A stretch of 64,000 bases of DNA from IMGVR_UViG_3300015262_000001:62001-126000, one strand, 5' to 3'. Numbered from the stretch's first letter, positions 8,186-54,297 are shown. The notes: generated by a model from the letters alone, not told the origin. A program made the numbers and translations.

Positions 8186-8650
8186 TTAATCAACTGTGGT
8201 CATATTGGCAAAGTTCTCAGAGAAATCAAATGCAGTACTGATGCTAGCAGCCGTACATTTATCCGAGATTAACACTGTCACACCTGTTTGTAGTTTGTAA
8301 TACGCTGAGATGACACCACCCTTATCCATGTAACCCACTGTAGTGAATTCTTTTCCATCCGCCGAGTAGATCTCTCGAGTGTCGGTTGCTTCCGCCGCTG
8401 AATGGTGGTAGGAGGTACCCATGTCGTTGCCCAGTTTAACGACGGTCTGTTCCGGCTGAATCAAATCCTTGCCGTAGAGAATCGTGAAGGTGTCTGTCTT
8501 GGGGTCACGCAGAACTAGCAGGCTTTTGGCGTCTTCTGTGTCACAGCTCAATAGAACATCTTCTTGCTTATCCTTGGGTATGCCATCCATAACTCCAGCA
8601 TGGACAACTACCGAAACAAAGATAAGAAACAGCGCGGTAAGCAATCGCAT
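8186..8650 (-). CDS. Exported/periplasmic protein with signal peptide, 154 aa
   Basis: MRLLTALFLIFVSVVVHA-G Sec signal (VHA cleavage motif); two Cys; RBS aaggag. Confidence 0.75.
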   Translation of the reverse strand: MRLLTALFLIFVSVVVHAGVMDGIPKDKQEDVLLSCDTEDAKSLLVLRDPKTDTFTILYGKDLIQPEQTVVKLGNDMGTSYHHSAAEATDTREIYSADGKEFTTVGYMDKGGVISAYYKLQTGVTVLISDKCTAASISTAFDFSENFANMTTVD

Positions 8651-8737
8651 AACTAACTCCTTGATGAAGAGGAATATTCCTAATCCCCCAAAAAATAAAA
8701 GACAGAGGATTTCTCCCCTGCCTTTTACGACGTTTAC

Positions 8738-9100
8738 TTACAGATACACAGCACGCTCAAGTACACCCATGCTCCACTTGTTGTGGACTTGGTCAGCATT
8801 GAACGCCTCTACTGCGGCTTGCAGGCTGGCGTGTAATCTTGTTTCGATAAGACCGCCTACCGAGTTACGGGAAACACGAACTTCGCCATTCTCCAGGTAC
8901 ATATGGTTCAGGCAGAAACCGGCTGTGTTGCTGCACAGAGGAACAACGATCCCTTTCTGTACACCTGGTTGACGGAAGATTGCAAGACCTGCGATCTTCA
9001 TGGTGTCTTTACCACTGTTGTGGTCGTCACCGATTACGCCATCGTTAGCTTGAACGATTGCTACGATTTCGTCGAACTGAGCTGCGTTGAAATGAGACAT
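8738..9100 (-). CDS. Early hypothetical protein, 120 aa (start refined to MSHFNAAQ)
   Basis: ATG at 9100 with GGAG RBS, directly downstream of the CCTATATTAC promoter. Confidence 0.75.
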   Translation of the reverse strand: MSHFNAAQFDEIVAIVQANDGVIGDDHNSGKDTMKIAGLAIFRQPGVQKGIVVPLCSNTAGFCLNHMYLENGEVRVSRNSVGGLIETRLHASLQAAVEAFNADQVHNKWSMGVLERAVYL

Positions 9101-9117
9101 GATAATACTCCGGAGTA

Positions 9118-9180
9118 TGAAAGACTTAATTGTCTTAATCACAGGAGTAATATAGGTCTGAAAACTGATGTATCTTAAAT
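9118..9180 (-). promoter_or_regulatory. Early promoter cassette copy 1 (TTTT-N-CCTATATTAC plus leader hairpin)
   Basis: TATATTAC at 9147-9154 (minus) resembles the phiKZ early TATTAC consensus; 54/63 identical to 54206-54268. Confidence 0.8.
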
Positions 9181-9215
9181 ATACCTACCTAGCCCTTAAC
9201 AGGCTAGGTAGGTAT
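9181..9215. terminator. Intrinsic terminator hairpin upstream of the early promoter
   Basis: 14-bp inverted repeat atacctacctagcc / ggctaggtaggtat. Confidence 0.75.
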
Positions 9216-9224
9216 AATAACGAG

Positions 9225-9413
9225 TTAACGTTTTGGTAAATCCAGATCCATGCCGTAACCAAACTGCTTAGGTGGCTCCAGTGGTTTAACAAAACCAGGA
9301 TTCTCCTTCAGTCCGTTTGGGTTCCACGATGGTCGATCAGCAGGCATCGTCGAGTAGACTTTACCCAAAGCATCCAGGTGAAGCCGTTGGCGCATTTCGT
9401 CATCAGGTGTCAT
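9225..9413 (-). CDS. Small hypothetical protein, 62 aa
   Basis: Fills the gap between tmk and the terminator on the operon strand. Confidence 0.6.
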   Translation of the reverse strand: MTPDDEMRQRLHLDALGKVYSTMPADRPSWNPNGLKENPGFVKPLEPPKQFGYGMDLDLPKR

Positions 9414-10233: not shown

Positions 10234-11043
10234 TTACGCAGCCGGAGCGAAGTGCGTCAGGATGTAGTCTTCAACAGCATCGATCTGATCGACGATCATC
10301 TTCGACCATGGTTCGAAAGGCACTTCTGGATCTTTGAACAGCGTATCGTTCTTGAGATCGTCAGCAGTTGCCCAGGCAACAGCGTCGTTCTGAGGCTCAG
10401 CCATGTCGAAGCGAACGGCTTCAGAAGCATCGATGGCATACACCACACCGTAGTGGATGTTGCCGACGTAGCCGGGTTCAGGTTTGCTGTCCATAACGAA
10501 GCCTACCTTCTTGAAGCCAGCTTCTTTGGCCTCGCCCATTACGTAATGGGTAACGTCTTGGTTGTCCTTGTCGAACAACTTGACTTCTTCGCCACCTTCA
10601 CGATCAACGGAGTCGTCAGTGGTTTCGTTCATGTCGATCAGCGGGGTGTGAGTCAACAGACCTGCGTCGCTGAGCATGTGATACGACACGTCGTAACCTT
10701 CGATATGGCCACCGGCGCCCAGGCTCAACTTGGACGTCAACTGACCTTCGTTGTTGGTCTTGTTACGACGGTAGACCATGAAGACAACCCGGGGGCGATC
10801 TTGCTGGAGGTTCTGGATGATGCGGTAGAACAAGATGTAACCGATGCCTTGACGCAGCAGTTCGAACTTGGCGTTCAGACCACGTACCGAACCCATGGTG
10901 ATATCATCAAGTGCACACAATCTGTGATGCAGCTCTTCTTGTGGCAGCAGCGTGAACGCATTGTCAGCGACGATAGCAGCCAGAGATGGGCCGTGTACGC
11001 CGTAAGTGAATTCGGCGCCTTTAGGAATAGTCTTCAACAACAT
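10234..11043 (-). CDS. NUDIX-family hydrolase (COG4112-like), 269 aa
   Basis: Y.R...E.L..KLSLGAGGHI...REGGEEV Nudix box with insertion; HYGVV and EPWS motifs typical of this subfamily. Confidence 0.8.
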   Translation of the reverse strand: MLLKTIPKGAEFTYGVHGPSLAAIVADNAFTLLPQEELHHRLCALDDITMGSVRGLNAKFELLRQGIGYILFYRIIQNLQQDRPRVVFMVYRRNKTNNEGQLTSKLSLGAGGHIEGYDVSYHMLSDAGLLTHTPLIDMNETTDDSVDREGGEEVKLFDKDNQDVTHYVMGEAKEAGFKKVGFVMDSKPEPGYVGNIHYGVVYAIDASEAVRFDMAEPQNDAVAWATADDLKNDTLFKDPEVPFEPWSKMIVDQIDAVEDYILTHFAPAA

Positions 11044-13273: not shown

Positions 13274-13290
13274 GTAATATAGGCTTGAAA
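13274..13290 (-). promoter_or_regulatory. Early promoter (TTTTCAAG-CCTATATTAC)
   Basis: Exact CCTATATTAC 10-mer preceded by a T-tract, intergenic, oriented toward the 13179 gene. Confidence 0.75.
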
Positions 13291-37191: not shown

Positions 37192-37210
37192 GTAATATAG
37201 GTTTAAAAAA
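37192..37210 (-). promoter_or_regulatory. Early promoter (TTTTTTAAA-CCTATATTAC)
   Basis: Exact 10-mer plus T-tract between divergent genes. Confidence 0.75.
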
Positions 37211-48617: not shown

Positions 48618-51461
48618 ATGTTTAACTTATTTTCAGTTGCTGTAAAGCAAACTGGGGTGTATGTACATATCACAGGAGTTTCATACGGCGCACTGGCACG
48701 AGACATCGAAAAGTTCTACAGCAGCTCACTGATCACCAAATGGCAGATCCGTAGAGAGACCTGGGATACCATCAAGGTTCATAACTTCTTTTTGGTGGAA
48801 TTTCATCTTGTCCTAGGTGAACTGCTAAAGGTTCGTAATCTTCGTAGCCGGCGTAGAGAGTTGGCAGAATTAAAACACCTGCTTGAAACTGAAACCTGGA
48901 TTAAAGACACCGTCAACCCCATTGGAAGACAGTTCGACTTCAAGAAACTGGATCGCTTTAAGGTTGCTCCTTTTCCTAAACAACGCGAGTTCCTGGAACA
49001 ATACCCCATTATCAAACCCAGCTATCACCTTAAAGGATTGTTGCTGGATGCTGCGGTGGGTAGTGGTAAGGCTATGCCCCTGAACACCCAGGTGAAAGTA
49101 CCGGGTGGCTGGAAGCGTCTAGGTGACCTTAAGATAGGTGACCAGGTGATAGGACCCAAGGGTAACGTTGCCAACATTACGGGTTATTTCCCTCAGGGTG
49201 TTACCGAGAGTTTCCGGTTTACCTTTGAGGATGGACGTACTGCCGATTCGCATCCACTCCATTTGTGGGAAGTAGCTGAGGCAGGCTTTGATGACCAAGG
49301 CCACGCTATTGGACAGACCTACGTTACTACGACCAAGGACATCGTTAATCACTTTGATCAGTTCAGTTACCATATCCCGTTGGTAGGTGACGTAGGTGAA
49401 GGACTTGCACCTTCCGAACTGGATCTACAACAGATAGCAACTGGTCTGCTGACTGCTGGTATACATATGGCTGACCCAGTGACAGAACTTTCCTACGTGG
49501 ATCGTCGTCAGATTGCCAAGCACATGATCGAGCAATCAGCCTGTCATGTGTCTGAAGCTGGTGTGTCTGTAGTGGTGACTAACGCCTATGGTGCTAGCAA
49601 CTTCCAGAAGGTCATGTGGAGCCTGGGTGGTATCGCTACTCAAGAACCTTTCGGTGACGGTTTCAAGGTGAACTTCAAACACCGTGACATGGTGTGGCTG
49701 GTAGACAGTTTGGTAAATCTGTCGCTGGGGGATATCATCGACGTTACCCAATACATGAAGCTCAAGCTGAAGATTGTGGCCATCCAACAACAGCCACAAA
49801 TTGAAACAGCCTGTATCAGTATTGACAGCGAAGATTGCCTGTACATTGTTGATAACTGGATCGTAACCCACAACACTGTTACTTCGTTGATGTGGTCGGT
49901 GCTGGTAAGCGATAACAAGTGTATCGTTCTCTGCCCACTGAACATCGTGGAAGAAGTGTGGCTGGGTAACATGCGGAAGCACTTCAAAGAGATGCCACGA
50001 GTATGGACATCTACGTCCGGTCGCTTGTTAACCGATGACTACGACTACTACATCGTGCACTATGAGTTCCTCCAGGGCAACCACTACGACTACTTACGTA
50101 AATGGTTCAATGAAGCCATGAAGCGTAATAAGAAGCAGTTTAGTCTGATCGTCGATGAGTCCCACAACTTTAATGACATGAAGTCTAAGCAAACCCGTCG
50201 ATTGGTGGAGCTAGCTGATGATGGGTTGTTCGAAGATGCGCTACCGATGTCTGGGACGCCGCTGAAGGCACTTGGGAGTGAGATCTACCCCATCACCTGC
50301 CTTATCGACAAACACTTCGACAAGCACGCTAGAGACTTCTTCATGGCGAGCTATGGGCGTAACCGTCCTGCATTGATCTCGTTGTTGGCTAACCGTATCG
50401 GTCGGGGCAAGTTCTCTATCCCTGAATTGGCTGGTATGGGAGATCCTCCTCCGTTTGAGATCATCAAGGTTAAAATCCCTAATGGGGAACAATACACCTT
50501 GGAAACCATTCGGTTGGCGATGCAGACGTATATTGTGGAGCGGGTTCGTTTCTACAATGCACACATGGCTGAGTTCATCGTGTTCTATAACGATGTGGTT
50601 CAGCGCTATGAATACACGGTCCTTAAGCACCCTAAAGAACTGGCCGAGCTACAACGCTACAAGGCGGTCGTTAATCGGTTCCGCACCCAAGGGTACAACA
50701 ACTTCACTGATTCAGCTGACAGCGCCTTCTGCAAGCACGTAGAGGAGTCTATCGAGCGTGGTATCAGAGGTCCAGAGTTGGCTGAATTCCGTAATGTGAA
50801 ATCAGCCGTTAAGTACCTGGCGTTGAAGATCCGCGGGGAAGCTTTGGGTAACGTATTGGGTCGTGCTCGCATCAATGCGATCAAAGATCTGATCGAGCAT
50901 GCTGAGTTACCTAAGTACATTGACGACGTAGAGAAGAAGACAGTTATCTTTACCTCTTACGTTGAAGCCTTGAAACTCTCGGTTGATTATTTGACCAAGC
51001 AGGGTTACAAGCCTGTATCAGTGTTCGGTGAAAACAGCGGTGATCGTGATCCAACGATCAAGCAGTTTGGTGAGGATGCTCGCACCAATCCGTTGGTGGC
51101 GGTGTACAACAGTTTGAAGGAAGGTTATCCGTTGTTGATGGCTAACCAGATCATCGGACTGGATTCCCCATTCAGGGAACACGAGTTGCGACAAGTAAAA
51201 GGAAGGATCTGGCGTACCGGACAGGATGCAGCGCAATGCTTCTTCCGTATGTTGGATATGGACACCGGCGATAAGCTCAACATCACCACGCGCAGTCTGG
51301 ACATCTTGGCCTGGAGTAAAGAACAGGTAGACGCCCTGATGGGTCGTATGGAAGGTCACGTGGCGTTTGCTAACGTAACCGGTGAAGAGTGTCTGGACAT
51401 CAGTGAAGAACTGACGGGTCGTCCGCTTAAATTGACTAACAGTGTGCTATCTCTTTTCTAA
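48618..51461 (+). CDS. SNF2-like superfamily 2 helicase with intein, 947 aa precursor
   Basis: Walker A DAAVGSGK/T, Walker B LIVDESHN, MSGTP, QVKGRIWRTGQ. Confidence 0.9.
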   Translation: MFNLFSVAVKQTGVYVHITGVSYGALARDIEKFYSSSLITKWQIRRETWDTIKVHNFFLVEFHLVLGELLKVRNLRSRRRELAELKHLLETETWIKDTVNPIGRQFDFKKLDRFKVAPFPKQREFLEQYPIIKPSYHLKGLLLDAAVGSGKAMPLNTQVKVPGGWKRLGDLKIGDQVIGPKGNVANITGYFPQGVTESFRFTFEDGRTADSHPLHLWEVAEAGFDDQGHAIGQTYVTTTKDIVNHFDQFSYHIPLVGDVGEGLAPSELDLQQIATGLLTAGIHMADPVTELSYVDRRQIAKHMIEQSACHVSEAGVSVVVTNAYGASNFQKVMWSLGGIATQEPFGDGFKVNFKHRDMVWLVDSLVNLSLGDIIDVTQYMKLKLKIVAIQQQPQIETACISIDSEDCLYIVDNWIVTHNTVTSLMWSVLVSDNKCIVLCPLNIVEEVWLGNMRKHFKEMPRVWTSTSGRLLTDDYDYYIVHYEFLQGNHYDYLRKWFNEAMKRNKKQFSLIVDESHNFNDMKSKQTRRLVELADDGLFEDALPMSGTPLKALGSEIYPITCLIDKHFDKHARDFFMASYGRNRPALISLLANRIGRGKFSIPELAGMGDPPPFEIIKVKIPNGEQYTLETIRLAMQTYIVERVRFYNAHMAEFIVFYNDVVQRYEYTVLKHPKELAELQRYKAVVNRFRTQGYNNFTDSADSAFCKHVEESIERGIRGPELAEFRNVKSAVKYLALKIRGEALGNVLGRARINAIKDLIEHAELPKYIDDVEKKTVIFTSYVEALKLSVDYLTKQGYKPVSVFGENSGDRDPTIKQFGEDARTNPLVAVYNSLKEGYPLLMANQIIGLDSPFREHELRQVKGRIWRTGQDAAQCFFRMLDMDTGDKLNITTRSLDILAWSKEQVDALMGRMEGHVAFANVTGEECLDISEELTGRPLKLTNSVLSLF
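49071..49874 (+). mobile_element. Class 3 intein (268 aa) in helicase Walker A, with decayed LAGLIDADG region
   Basis: Starts Ala (AMPLNT), ends VTHN, followed by +1 Thr; block B HLW, block F ETACI, block G T (WCT triplet). Removal restores GSGKT. Confidence 0.92.
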
Positions 51462-53613: not shown

Positions 53614-53985
53614 TCAGTGAATAGAACGCGAGTGACTGCTGCTTTTGGCCTTGTTCATGGCCGCTGTCACCAAGCTGTTCTGGCGGGTGGTATCCTCACT
53701 CATGAGTTTGAGCAGGGATGGGCTAGCTTTAACCAACGAGCTCATTTCCATCTCAAAGCGACCACCCTTGCGAACATGCAGCACACCCAGCTGGTGACCG
53801 AACTCAGTACTGGCGAATTCGATGAAGTCACCTTCATTGCAATAACTGATGGCCAGTTGCAACATCCGAGGCATCGCAGTGTCAAAATAGTTATAGTGCC
53901 GAACCATAATGACTTCTTTGGATTTACCACGAGTCATGGTGGCGATAACACGACGACGGCTAGGGGTGTTAAATTCGTTAGACAT
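53614..53985 (-). CDS. Hypothetical protein, 123 aa
   Basis: aagga RBS; operon packing. Confidence 0.75.
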   Translation of the reverse strand: MSNEFNTPSRRRVIATMTRGKSKEVIMVRHYNYFDTAMPRMLQLAISYCNEGDFIEFASTEFGHQLGVLHVRKGGRFEMEMSSLVKASPSLLKLMSEDTTRQNSLVTAAMNKAKSSSHSRSIH

Positions 53986-53994
53986 GAGGATTCC

Positions 53995-54189
53995 TTAAGC
54001 GTTCAGGGTAGACAGTTCGGCTTCACGTTCTTTCAGCTTAGCCTCTTGGCTTGCCAACAAACCTTCAAGGGTTTTAATCCCCGTAGTGTCTGCAAAACTG
54101 ATTTGGTCAATCTGACCGAGAATGTGTTGAATCTTCTCCTTGATCAGTTGTACGCTGCTCTCCAGGGTTTTGCGGTATTCAGTATTCAT
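53995..54189 (-). CDS. Small coiled-coil early protein, 64 aa
   Basis: First gene behind promoter cassette copy 2; GGAG RBS. Confidence 0.75.
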   Translation of the reverse strand: MNTEYRKTLESSVQLIKEKIQHILGQIDQISFADTTGIKTLEGLLASQEAKLKEREAELSTLNA

Positions 54190-54205
54190 GGTATTACTCC
54201 TAGGG

Positions 54206-54268
54206 TGAAAGACATAATTGTCTTAATCACACTGGTAATATAGGTCCAAAAAAACATGTATCTTAAAT
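54206..54268 (-). promoter_or_regulatory. Early promoter cassette copy 2
   Basis: TATATTAC at 54235-54242 (minus); 54/63 identical to 9118-9180. Confidence 0.8.
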
Positions 54269-54269
54269 A

Positions 54270-54297
54270 AACCCCTACCCCATTACGGGGTAGGGTT
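54270..54297. terminator. Intrinsic terminator hairpin upstream of cassette copy 2
   Basis: aaccctacccc-cattac-ggggtagggtt. Confidence 0.75.

What the first reader, a model, noticed from the sequence alone, without database searches (positions are those of the whole stretch)
9118..9215. Duplicated 63-bp terminator-promoter-leader cassette heading two distant early operons
Seen: 9118-9180 and 54206-54268 have equal length and are 54/63 identical, although 45 kb apart and upstream of unrelated genes. Each is immediately preceded, in transcription direction, by a different terminator hairpin. Identity extends well beyond the CCTATATTAC core, upstream (ATTTAAGATACAT) and downstream (TGTGATTAAGACAATTA.GTCTTTCA). 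Established: T4-type phages use promoter-early stem-loop (PeSL) cassettes as recombination points for shuffling accessory genes. Inference: this may be an analogous mobile regulatory cassette in a nucleus-forming jumbo phage.
Basis: partly seen in the sequence, partly recalled or inferred. Interest (0 to 1): 0.6.

Follow-up and report, generated by a model that had tools for sequence, protein, structure and literature searches.

The report
Shared early promoter-leader module of jumbo phage
The repeated 63-bp stretch is real: it is an extended early promoter for the phage's own virion RNA polymerase, fused to a conserved hairpin leader and ribosome site, and it sits at five fixed places in this family of soil jumbo phages; two copies border unusually changeable genes, but the element itself does not move.

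Summary
In detail: window 9118-9180 and 54206-54268 match at 54/63 positions (58/68 when extended), where chance predicts about 1e-13 such pairs. Both lie on the minus strand behind strong, unrelated terminator hairpins.

The window is part of a complete 228.6-kb phage genome from a rhizosphere metagenome. It encodes the jumbo-phage RNA polymerase beta subunit and a PhuZ-like tubulin.

The genome holds four full copies (A and B in the window, C and D outside) and one degenerate copy. The layout is TTTAAGATACA (about -30), TTTCAGR (about -20), YCTATATTAC (about -10, the known chimallivirus early-promoter core), a GTGA start region, a hairpin (GUGA/UCAY outer stem, AAGAC/GUCUU inner stem), then GGAG and ATG.

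About ten related metagenomic phages carry the same module at the same syntenic positions. Copies group by site, not by genome, so they are old orthologues kept by selection rather than mobile or recently copied.

The PeSL idea is only partly borne out. The first gene behind A and B differs among relatives, and B's leader looks chimeric. However, there are only five copies, 24-52 kb apart. The enrichment is not significant, the most recent swap at A has its crossovers outside the cassette, and Aeromonas phages with the same promoter type show no association.

No transcription start was mapped.

The parts
9180..9216 (-). Terminator hairpin ahead of copy A (16-bp stem, 5-nt loop); its 3' end abuts the -30 element
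   Evidence: strand folding gives -27.9 kcal/mol, z -6.8, 0 of 200 shuffles as good. The sequence is unrelated to the hairpin ahead of copy B.
9169..9179 (-). Copy A, upstream element TTTAAGATACA (about -30 relative to the inferred start)
   Evidence: Exact in all four full copies of the genome. Present with TTTAAGATCCA in six promoters of each of three Aeromonas jumbo phages. It occurs without an adjacent hairpin at copies C and D, so it is not a terminator tail.
9147..9163 (-). Copy A, TTTCAGA (about -20) plus CCTATATTAC (about -10) core of the early promoter
   Evidence: Matches published chimallivirus early-promoter consensus sequences (phiKZ TATATTAC, EL WTTTYAAACCTACATTATY, 201phi2-1 ...HYWTTTRARR_BTATATTACDWHDGTG; PMC7058600). 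YCTAYATTAC lies on one strand 8-14 times against 0-1 on the other in relatives.
9116..9143 (-). Copy A, inferred start region (G at 9142) and 5'-terminal leader hairpin: outer stem UGUGA/UCAUA, UU bulge, inner stem AAGAC/GUCUU, loop AAUUAA
   Evidence: Fold -6.8 kcal/mol. On alignment A3, 83.5% of cells are paired against 34-59% when the partner is slid; 0 of 500 shuffles reach that, and 8 cells changed on both sides. The start position is inferred only from the rule that the motif is centred near -10 (PMC7598289).
9098..9111 (-). Copy A, Shine-Dalgarno GGAG (9108-9111) and ATG (9098-9100)
   Evidence: Read directly from the sequence. The same GGAGTAATACCATG context recurs at site A in relatives and at site B in two genomes.
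8738..9100 (-). Gene A, 120 aa, function unknown ('A domain'). Relatives carry variable architectures: alone, tandem, or fused behind an N domain of about 170 aa
   Evidence: No Pfam family, only a weak phrog_35911 hit, no informative ESM Atlas neighbour. A soil metatranscriptome contig covers 8703-9097 with 2 mismatches.
8695..8728 (-). Terminator closing the single-gene unit A; right-hand boundary of the variable segment
   Evidence: Terminator scan. Homology to relatives resumes at 8725-8741.
54273..54295 (-). Terminator hairpin ahead of copy B (CCCUACCCC/GGGGUAGGG), of the phiKZ-type terminator pattern with a TTAT tail
   Evidence: -19.5 kcal/mol, z -3.5. The conserved phiKZ terminator motif is described in PMC10914365.
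54235..54267 (-). Copy B promoter: TTTAAGATACA (54257-54267), TTTTTGGA (about -20), CCTATATTAC (54235-54244)
   Evidence: Orthologous copies in relatives carry a B-specific signature (TTTTGGRCCTATATTACCARTG).
54205..54230 (-). Copy B leader hairpin: GUGA/UCAC outer stem, AAGACA/UGUCUU inner stem, loop AUUA
   Evidence: -8.1 kcal/mol; pair counts on alignment A3.
54187..54200 (-). Copy B Shine-Dalgarno GGAG (54197-54200) and ATG (54187-54189), in the A-type context GGAGTAATACCATG
   Evidence: Relatives with the 123-aa gene directly behind cassette B have a different context (GTAAAAGGATTCC..ATG). That context survives here in front of the 123-aa gene.
53995..54189 (-). 64-aa ORFan, first gene behind copy B, found only in this genome; it sits between the leader hairpin and the resident ribosome site of the 123-aa gene (53614-53985)
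   Evidence: tblastn finds no homologue in three complete relatives or 31 related loci. Junctions shown. No Pfam or PHROG family.
13274..13283 (-). Plain early promoter core (no -30 element), for comparison
   Evidence: The leader is conserved in relatives and has its own CAGAC/GTCTG hairpin.
37192..37201 (-). Plain early promoter core (no -30 element), for comparison

Best explanation
The repeat is a conserved early-expression module of a phiKZ-type (RNA-polymerase-encoding) jumbo phage, not a mobile element. Read on the minus strand, each copy has five parts: (1) a site-specific terminator hairpin that insulates it from upstream transcription; (2) a three-part promoter for the virion-packaged phage RNA polymerase, made of TTTAAGATACA near -30, TTTCAGR near -20 and YCTATATTAC near -10; (3) a GTGA start region; (4) a leader whose first nucleotides are locked into a two-step hairpin (GUGA/UCAY plus AAGAC/GUCUU); (5) a strong ribosome site and the ATG. 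Shown here: the anatomy; four full and one degenerate copy per genome, all on one strand; the same five syntenic positions in every complete relative; and copies that resemble their positional counterparts in other genomes more than their neighbours in the same genome. The similarity between distant copies is therefore old and held by selection. Inferred: recognition by the virion polymerase, by analogy with mapped promoters of phiKZ and 201phi2-1; a start at the G of GTGA; and the hairpin's role. My preferred role for the hairpin is protection of the earliest mRNAs from 5'-end-dependent decay (RNase E and RppH need an unpaired 5' end). Secondary, and only suggested: because about 70-90 bp are shared, the module may act as a homology anchor when a new gene is placed directly behind it. 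That would explain why the first gene behind A and B is so changeable.
For: The core and flanks match published chimallivirus early-promoter consensus sequences, including the downstream GTG (PMC7058600 Table 2). Early promoters of phiKZ and 201phi2-1 are conserved at -10, -20 and -30, with the motif centred near -10 (PMC11512511, PMC8244752, PMC7598289). The genome encodes a 1525-aa jumbo-phage RNA polymerase beta subunit (phrog_3148, E = 0) and a tubulin-like ORF. YCTAYATTAC is strongly strand-biased. Genome copies were found. A pattern scan found 33 stretches, 31 of them in the related metagenomic jumbo-phage contigs, with up to 4 per contig. Positions are orthologous. Identity by site is 0.80, against 0.656 within a genome and 0.642 for neither. 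The same extended layout occurs six times in each of Aeromonas phages PS1, PS2 and pAEv1810, and once in Salmonella phage SA002, all of which encode the same polymerase. Hairpin: 83.5% of cells paired against 34-59% when slid, 0 of 500 shuffles, 8 double-sided changes, and G-U/G-C alternation in the outer stem that suits RNA rather than a DNA palindrome. In this genome 7 of 11 early leaders fold at -6 kcal/mol or better, against 16% of GC-matched controls. The promoter pattern occurs at chance level (5 hits) in 596 Gb of prokaryote genomes.
Against: No transcription start, timing or polymerase specificity was measured. The phage is uncultured, and the only RNA data are low-depth metatranscriptome contigs that cannot show 5' ends. 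Each leader hairpin alone is weak (-6.8 and -8.1 kcal/mol, z about -1.6). RNAalifold supports only the outer stem. Copy C and some divergent relatives have weak or no hairpins. phiKZ early leaders are not enriched for hairpins (mean z -0.23, p = 0.45), so the hairpin is not needed for this class of polymerase and its role is open. TTTAAGATACA and CTATATTAC are invariant in the relatives' set by design of the search pattern. The hairpin sequence is more conserved among A, B and D than structure alone requires, which could point to sequence-specific recognition.
Confidence: 0.65

Rival explanations
1. A PeSL-like recombination cassette: the shared terminator-promoter-leader sequence is mainly a crossover point that shuffles accessory early genes between phages and between sites, and this is what keeps the copies alike.
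For: The first gene behind A has at least four architectures among relatives, and a 203-aa gene is present or absent just upstream. Behind B there is either nothing extra, a unique 64-aa ORFan, or a 141-aa gene, always inserted between the leader hairpin and the resident ribosome site. B's leader ends in the A-type GGAGTAATACCATG in this genome and in L021. In one relative an A-domain gene, with an A-type cassette signature and its own terminator, sits at site D. Against G001-G003, non-homology starts within a few nt of the ATG behind A and B, but at none of 7 plain early promoters. A contig about 99% identical in its flanks carries replacements on both sides of cassette A.
Against: The five positions are fixed in all genomes and there is no concerted evolution. 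No gene is flanked by two full cassettes, and the spacing is 24-52 kb. Only 2 of 35-47 non-homologous segments touch a cassette. Two of four is about p = 0.1 by my rough, unrun gene-boundary estimate, and my hand Fisher calculation of 2/4 against 0/7 gives 0.11. In the L024/X2 comparison the whole A module is a divergent patch (83.6% against 94-98.5% in the flanks) with crossovers outside the cassette. The 'replacements' at A are largely domain gain and loss within one gene family. In the Aeromonas clade none of six such promoters borders a breakpoint, and none of the 5 PS1/PS2 differences lies near one.
Confidence: 0.2
2. A DNA operator: the inverted repeat AAGAC-N6-GTCTT just downstream of the start is a binding site for a dimeric phage repressor that shuts off these early units.
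For: The repeat sits where operators that block initiation or escape usually sit. Its sequence is nearly identical in copies A, B and D and in most relatives, which is more than base pairing alone needs.
Against: Single copies within one genome changed both half-sites together (AAGATC/GATCTT in L021, AAAGGTA/TACCTTT in L016) while the other copies of that genome kept AAGAC. The outer stem alternates between G-U and G-C, which is neutral in RNA but a mismatch in DNA symmetry. Copy C and the Aeromonas copies have unrelated stems.
Confidence: 0.1
3. A host sigma-70 early promoter, as in T4-type PeSLs (TTAAGA-18 nt-TATATT).
For: The consensus scan scores 9 of 12 at copy A.
Against: The number of such matches is no higher than in shuffles (2 found, 2.9 expected). 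The -35 hexamer is poor and the spacer is 18 nt. The conserved positions (CC before TATATT, AC after, TTTCAGR, GTGA) fit the virion-polymerase consensus, not sigma-70. phiKZ-type phages transcribe independently of host polymerase (PMC7598289).
Confidence: 0.05
4. A recent duplication or gene conversion with no function of its own.
For: The copies are alike although 45 kb apart.
Against: Each copy has an orthologue at the same position in genomes only 82-84% identical overall, and orthologues are closer than paralogues.
Confidence: 0.02

Closest known systems
Early (virion RNA polymerase) promoters of phiKZ-like jumbo phages (phiKZ, 201phi2-1, EL, OBP, N1M2)
   Same: An AT-rich core ...TATATTAC centred near -10, a T-rich TTTMARR element just upstream, a further conserved block near -30, and a TG/GTG a few nt downstream. 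They lie on one strand, ahead of small genes of unknown function, often right after a terminator (PMC7058600, PMC8244752, PMC11512511, PMC7598289; phiKZ sites read).
   Different: Here a subset of five promoters per genome carries a distinct TTTAAGATACA block about 16 nt further upstream than the phiKZ TTTAAGATC element. They also share a near-identical transcribed leader hairpin and ribosome-site context. phiKZ early leaders show no excess of hairpins. No transcription start has been mapped for this phage.
T4-type PeSLs (promoter-early stem-loop cassettes; Arbiol et al. 2010, Comeau et al. 2014)
   Same: A composite of stem-loop terminator, early promoter, Shine-Dalgarno site and ATG, conserved over about 70-100 bp. 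They sit ahead of ORFans, and some differential genes between relatives are contiguous with them.
   Different: PeSLs use host sigma-70, number about 50 per genome, cluster in hyperplastic regions, flank single ORFans on both sides and yield mini-circles, and 10 of 14 differential ORFans touch one (PMC2839356). Here the polymerase is the phage's own. There are five dispersed copies at fixed sites. The conserved stem-loop is in the transcript, while the terminators differ. Only 2 of 35-47 differences touch a copy.
Phage morons (promoter-gene-terminator units; Juhala et al. 2000, as cited in PMC10914365)
   Same: Unit A is a single accessory gene with its own promoter and its own terminator, set between conserved genes. 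In one relative the gene and its terminator are found at another site.
   Different: Morons are usually described in temperate phages, expressed from host-type promoters in lysogens. This unit is present at the same site in all relatives and is driven by a phage-polymerase promoter.
5'-terminal stabiliser hairpins of bacterial and phage mRNAs (ompA 5' UTR; T7 gene 10 leader).
   Same: A stem-loop that begins at, or within a nucleotide or two of, the 5' end and is followed by a ribosome site.
   Different: The function here is inferred only. The stem is short (4 + 5 bp with a bulge, about -7 to -8 kcal/mol), and neither the 5' end nor the half-life has been measured.

Membership tests
Chimallivirus (phiKZ-like) early promoter for the virion RNA polymerase | Conserved AT-rich motif of about 10 nt (...TATATTAC or a close variant) | tested here: met
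   CCTATATTAC at 9147-9156 and 54235-54244. There are 11 YCTAYATTAC sites in the genome, all on one strand. Published consensus sequences are in PMC7058600.
Chimallivirus (phiKZ-like) early promoter for the virion RNA polymerase | The genome encodes split multisubunit RNA polymerases of the jumbo-phage type | tested here: met
   1525-aa ORF at window 18622-23199 matches phrog_3148 with E = 0. The same family is found in relatives G001, PS2 and SA002. The virion and non-virion enzyme sets were not told apart.
Chimallivirus (phiKZ-like) early promoter for the virion RNA polymerase | Motif centred near -10 of a mapped early transcription start; transcription independent of host polymerase and of protein synthesis | not testable with these tools
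   The phage is uncultured, and the only RNA data are metatranscriptome contigs.
Chimallivirus (phiKZ-like) early promoter for the virion RNA polymerase | Located upstream of presumed early operons, intergenic, co-oriented with the genes | tested here: met
   All four copies lie 45-71 nt upstream of an ATG preceded by a ribosome site, on the coding strand.
T4-type PeSL mobile regulatory cassette | Composite of stem-loop terminator plus early promoter plus Shine-Dalgarno site and ATG, conserved over about 100 bp | tested here: met
   Terminator, promoter, leader and ribosome site are present. However, the terminators themselves are not conserved between copies.
T4-type PeSL mobile regulatory cassette | Promoter is a strong host sigma-70 consensus | tested here: not met
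   9 of 12 with an 18-nt spacer, no better than shuffles. The conserved positions fit the phage-polymerase consensus instead.
T4-type PeSL mobile regulatory cassette | Many copies (about 50) clustered in hyperplastic regions, often flanking single ORFans on both sides | tested here: not met
   Five copies per genome, 24-52 kb apart, and no gene flanked by two full copies.
T4-type PeSL mobile regulatory cassette | Most differential genes between close relatives are contiguous with a cassette | tested here: not met
   2 of 35-47 non-homologous segments per genome pair touch a cassette. None of the 5 PS1/PS2 differences and none of 6 sites in the Aeromonas clade does. Two of the four cassettes do border variable genes.
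T4-type PeSL mobile regulatory cassette | Recombination between cassettes yields mini-circles or chimeric cassettes | tested here: inconclusive
   The chimeric-looking leader at B (B-type promoter signature with A-type ribosome-site context) and the A-type unit at site D in L027 are suggestive. Circles cannot be tested here.
Conserved structured RNA element (5' leader hairpin) | Base pairing kept through compensatory changes | tested here: inconclusive
   83.5% of cells paired against 34-59% when slid; 0 of 500 shuffles reach that. Five pairs show double-sided changes (8 cells; 18 of 500 shuffles reach this). RNAalifold supports only the outer stem. There is no Rfam match.

The most novel reading that the evidence does not exclude
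The shared leader (GUGAUUAAGAC-loop-GUCUUUCAY plus a fixed ribosome-site context) is a recognition tag, not just a stabiliser. In this reading a virion-delivered or very early phage factor picks out the five or six immediate-early transcripts by it, for protection, preferential translation or hand-over from the early infection compartment. Because any ORF placed directly behind the tag is expressed at once, the module also serves as a landing pad where new accessory genes are captured. This would be a phage-polymerase counterpart of T4 PeSLs, or of an integron's promoter and attachment site.
Probability: 0.15. Interest if true: 0.7.

Novelty: new variant of a known kind. Interest (0 to 1): 0.42.

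Why it matters
Early promoters of phiKZ-like phages are known, but how their earliest messages are made stable and translatable is poorly understood. These messages appear before the phage nucleus and the phage's RNase E inhibitor exist.

This clade, and a cultured Aeromonas clade, show two tiers of early promoter. Most are plain. A fixed set of five or six carries an extra upstream block, a shared 5' leader and a shared ribosome-site context.

If the leader is functional, it is a compact, portable expression signal for the virion polymerase. That would help in annotating immediate-early genes in uncultured jumbo phages and in engineering them.

The changeable first genes behind copies A and B mark likely host-interaction genes. 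The result also limits the reach of the PeSL model: a shared regulatory sequence next to variable genes does not by itself show mobility.

Tried and rejected
- Near-identical DNA search of both regions against 50,697 phage records gave no match. Distant search found only about 65% identity to EL-like Pseudomonas phages and Erwinia RisingSun/Joad.
- Covariation counted on the first MAFFT alignment, inner stem only, was not significant: 2 double-change cells, and the covariation score was below the shuffles. The count was redone on a leader-only alignment with both stems.
- RNAalifold on the leader alignment gave almost no consensus energy (-0.07 kcal/mol).
- My crude gene caller picked antisense shadow ORFs at sites A, B and C, so the planned gene-level hypergeometric test was dropped. 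A coarser boundary argument was used instead.
- I tested whether a 5' hairpin is general to this polymerase class. It is not in phiKZ.
- An upstream reading frame from the leader GTG runs in frame with gene A and ends in a TGA overlapping the ATG in copies B and D. It is not conserved in relatives and would need leaderless GUG initiation, so I judged it chance.
- Function of the cargo genes: no Pfam family, except a sub-threshold PT-TG hit (18.7 bits against a 23.5-bit cut-off) on the site-A protein of relative L002; only a weak PHROG hit; and no informative Atlas neighbour.
- Rfam gave only a chance miRNA hit on the terminator.
- A scan of prokaryote genomes for the promoter pattern, done to find a host, returned chance-level hits only.
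- RNA evidence: one soil metatranscriptome holds contigs over gene A and its neighbours, but contigs cannot show a start and DNA carry-over is not excluded.

Full report
**1. The observation**

Extended without gaps, they match at 58 of 68. About 9e-14 such pairs are expected by chance in 64 kb. A 25-nt leader pattern with up to three mismatches hits only these two places, against 0.00 expected from shuffles.

The genes here run on the minus strand, so the element must be read in reverse complement. Each copy follows a strong hairpin, and the two hairpins have unrelated sequences:
- 9180-9216: 16 bp, -27.9 kcal/mol, z -6.8.
- 54273-54295: 9 bp, -19.5 kcal/mol, z -3.5.

The downstream proteins (120 aa and 64 aa) show no similarity to each other.

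**2. What the genome is**

The window is bases 62001-126000 of a single 228,597-bp record with direct terminal repeats and 50% G+C. It was assembled from a rhizosphere metagenome.
- No near-identical phage record is in the collection.
- The closest DNA matches, at about 65% identity, are EL-like Pseudomonas phages and Erwinia phages RisingSun and Joad.
- The window encodes a 1525-aa jumbo-phage RNA polymerase beta subunit (phrog_3148, E = 0).
- The genome encodes a tubulin-like 345-aa ORF.

It is therefore a phiKZ-type phage. I did not look for the nuclear-shell protein itself.

**3. Anatomy of the module**

The core CCTATATTAC is the known early-promoter motif of this phage group. Published consensus sequences (PMC7058600) are:
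- phiKZ: TATATTAC
- EL: WTTTYAAACCTACATTATY
- 201phi2-1: TTAWTAVAA_HYWTTTRARR_BTATATTACDWHDGTG
- N1M2 and OBP: ...TTTCARRYAKATATTATYWAAGTGWA

Mapped early promoters of phiKZ and 201phi2-1 are conserved at -10, -20 and -30, with the motif centred near -10 (PMC8244752, PMC11512511, PMC7598289). On that basis:
- TTTCAGA is the -20 element.
- TTTAAGATACA is a block near -30.
- The G of GTGA (window 9142 and 54230) is the likely start.

This placement is by analogy only; no start was measured.

From that G the transcript can fold at once into a two-step hairpin:
- outer stem GUGA/UCAY
- a UU bulge
- inner stem AAGAC/GUCUU
- a loop of 4-6 nt
- then GGAG and the ATG.

**4. Copies in the genome and in relatives**

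Genome-wide there are four full copies, all on the minus strand. The core sits at genome positions 71147 (A), 116235 (B), 167776 (C) and 206213 (D). One degenerate copy lies at 142481. About seven plain early promoters have only the -20 and -10 parts.

A pattern scan of IMG/VR found 33 stretches. Of these, 31 lie in about ten related metagenomic jumbo-phage contigs of 214-233 kb, with up to 4 per contig. The exact pattern misses the degenerate fifth copy. The leader sequence occurs nowhere else in that collection. The promoter pattern occurs only at chance level in 596 Gb of prokaryote genomes.

The -30 and -10 blocks are invariant in this set because the search pattern required them. The leader is not affected by that bias.

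**5. Mobile, or old and fixed?**

I mapped flanking ORFs of all related loci onto this genome. The copies sit at the same places everywhere:
- A: after thymidylate kinase and a 62-aa gene.
- B: after a 66-aa membrane protein.
- C: before a protein of about 380 aa.
- D: after a 775-aa protein.

I fetched three complete relatives (G001-G003). They are 86-88% alignable to this genome at 82-84% identity. Each has five -30-bearing promoters in the same order.

Outside the pattern-fixed columns, mean identity between copies is:
- 0.80 for the same site in different genomes
- 0.656 for different sites in the same genome
- 0.642 for different site and different genome.

The last two do not differ significantly (p = 0.16). 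The paralogous copies therefore diverged before these phages did. They have been kept alike by selection, not by recent copying or gene conversion.

**6. The same design in a second clade**

Aeromonas phages PS1, PS2 and pAEv1810 each have exactly six dispersed promoters of the form TTTAAGATCCA-N-TTTCAAACCTATATTAC-nnnnGTG. Most are followed by a hairpin, and they share a ribosome-site context, TAGATAAGGAATA. Salmonella phage SA002 has a similar one. PS2 and SA002 encode the same polymerase family.

**7. Is the hairpin real?**

Taken singly, the two window hairpins are weak: -6.8 and -8.1 kcal/mol, z about -1.6. Across 26 distinct leaders:
- 83.5% of cells pair in register, against 34-59% when the partner is slid by 1-3 columns.
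- No shuffle out of 500 reaches that percentage.
- Five pairs show changes on both sides, for example AAGATC/GATCTT in L021 and AAAGGTA/TACCTTT in L016.
- The outer stem alternates between G-U and G-C.

RNAalifold, however, supports only the outer stem. Copy C and the most divergent relative fold poorly.

In this genome 7 of 11 early leaders fold at -6 kcal/mol or better, against 16% of GC-matched controls. In phiKZ, early leaders show no such excess: mean z -0.23, p = 0.45. The hairpin is therefore a lineage feature, not a requirement of the polymerase.

I favour a 5'-end-protecting role, on the general rule that RNase E and RppH need an unpaired 5' end. That rule is from my own knowledge. 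A recognition role is not excluded, because the stem sequence is more conserved than pairing requires.

**8. The PeSL idea: evidence for**

- Against all three complete relatives, non-homology begins within a few nucleotides of the ATG behind A and behind B. It does so at none of seven plain early promoters.
- At A, the 120-aa protein is homologous to the C-terminal domain of the roughly 290-aa proteins found there in G001-G003. Other relatives have a tandem of that domain, or only the N domain. A 203-aa gene is present or absent just upstream.
- At B, the 64-aa gene is unique to this genome. It lies exactly between the leader hairpin and the ribosome site that serves the 123-aa gene in relatives. 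It carries an A-type GGAGTAATACCATG context.
- In contig 44878 an A-domain gene sits at site D, with an A-type promoter signature and its own terminator.
- A contig from another rhizosphere sample is about 99% identical in its flanks but has replacements on both sides of cassette A.

**9. The PeSL idea: evidence against**

- Only 2 of 35-47 non-homologous segments touch a cassette.
- About 14-19% of gene boundaries are variable, by my rough estimate from 35-47 segments over about 250 genes. On that estimate, 2 of 4 is about p = 0.1. My hand Fisher calculation of 2/4 against 0/7 gives 0.11. Neither test was run in a tool.
- The L024 comparison shows the whole A unit as a divergent patch: 83.6% identity, against 94-98.5% in the flanks. 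The crossovers lie at the end of the 62-aa gene and at the downstream terminator, not in the cassette.
- No gene is flanked by two full copies.
- In the Aeromonas clade, none of the six sites borders a breakpoint directly. None of the five PS1/PS2 differences lies near one.

PeSLs, by contrast, are sigma-70 promoters, number about 50 per genome, cluster in hyperplastic regions, and account for 10 of 14 differential ORFans (PMC2839356).

I therefore file the element as an extended virion-polymerase promoter with a conserved leader. Any recombination role is secondary and unproven.

**10. Other rivals**

- A sigma-70 reading (TTAAGA-18-TATATT, 9 of 12) is no better than shuffles. It does not explain the conserved positions.
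- A DNA operator is argued against by single-copy compensatory changes and by the G-U pairs.
- No Rfam family matches.

**11. Limits**

- No transcription start, timing or polymerase dependence was measured.
- RNA evidence is limited to low-depth contigs from one soil metatranscriptome. One of these spans gene A (8703-9097, 2 mismatches). Contigs cannot show ends, and DNA carry-over is not excluded.
- The related genomes are metagenomic and not independent of one another.
- The cargo genes have no recognisable function.

Noticed in passing
window 8695-9216 (-): Gene A is a self-contained unit of terminator, promoter-leader, one ORF and terminator, like a moron. In relative L027 the homologous gene, with a similar terminator (GGGGAGA..TCTCCCC TGTCTATTATT), sits at a different site (D).
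   Followed up: partly
window 9098-9142 (-) and 54187-54230 (-): The frame opened by the leader GTG runs into gene A (134-aa ORF 8738-9142). In copies B and D the same frame ends in a TGA overlapping the ATG. It is not conserved in relatives such as L003, so it is probably chance.
   Followed up: partly
window 13274-13283 (-) and 37192-37201 (-): Two plain early promoters lack the -30 block. Their leaders are conserved in relatives, and the first has its own CAGAC/GTCTG hairpin.
   Followed up: partly
whole genome and relatives G001-G005: All YCTAYATTAC sites lie on one strand (8-14 against 0-1 per genome), so all early units are co-directional. The five -30-bearing ones are spaced 24-52 kb apart.
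   Followed up: no
G000:C1:206246-206290 (outside the window) and D-site copies L001, L004 and L030: In this genome and three relatives the D-site copy carries a partial core-like CTATTAC about 18-23 nt upstream of TTTAAGATACA, after a small hairpin. It may be the remnant of an older promoter.
   Followed up: no
G000:C1:166571-167704 and 205826-206158 (outside the window): The first genes behind copies C (377 aa) and D (110 aa) share a glycine-zipper-like, probably membrane-embedded segment. The similarity is weak (36% over 53 aa, E = 0.006, between relatives).
   Followed up: partly
L024:9140-9946: The closest partial relative has a tandem duplication of the A domain (268 aa). The same 454-nt insertion is seen in a contig of run X3, between window positions 8728 and 8741.
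   Followed up: partly
window 8445-8648, 8703-9097, 9160-9359 and 10280-10500: A soil metatranscriptome (X12) holds short contigs over these four stretches only. The one over gene A is 99.5% identical; the others are 90-96% identical.
   Followed up: partly
Aeromonas phage PS2, W01:C1:224076-228777: The RNA polymerase beta (phrog_3148) match is split in two, with a TAA inside the first piece. This could be a split gene, an intron or an error.
   Followed up: no
G000:C1:49988-50512 (outside the window): A PhuZ-like tubulin ORF (345 aa, just under the Pfam cut-off) lies directly behind a plain early promoter (core at 50503-50512).
   Followed up: no
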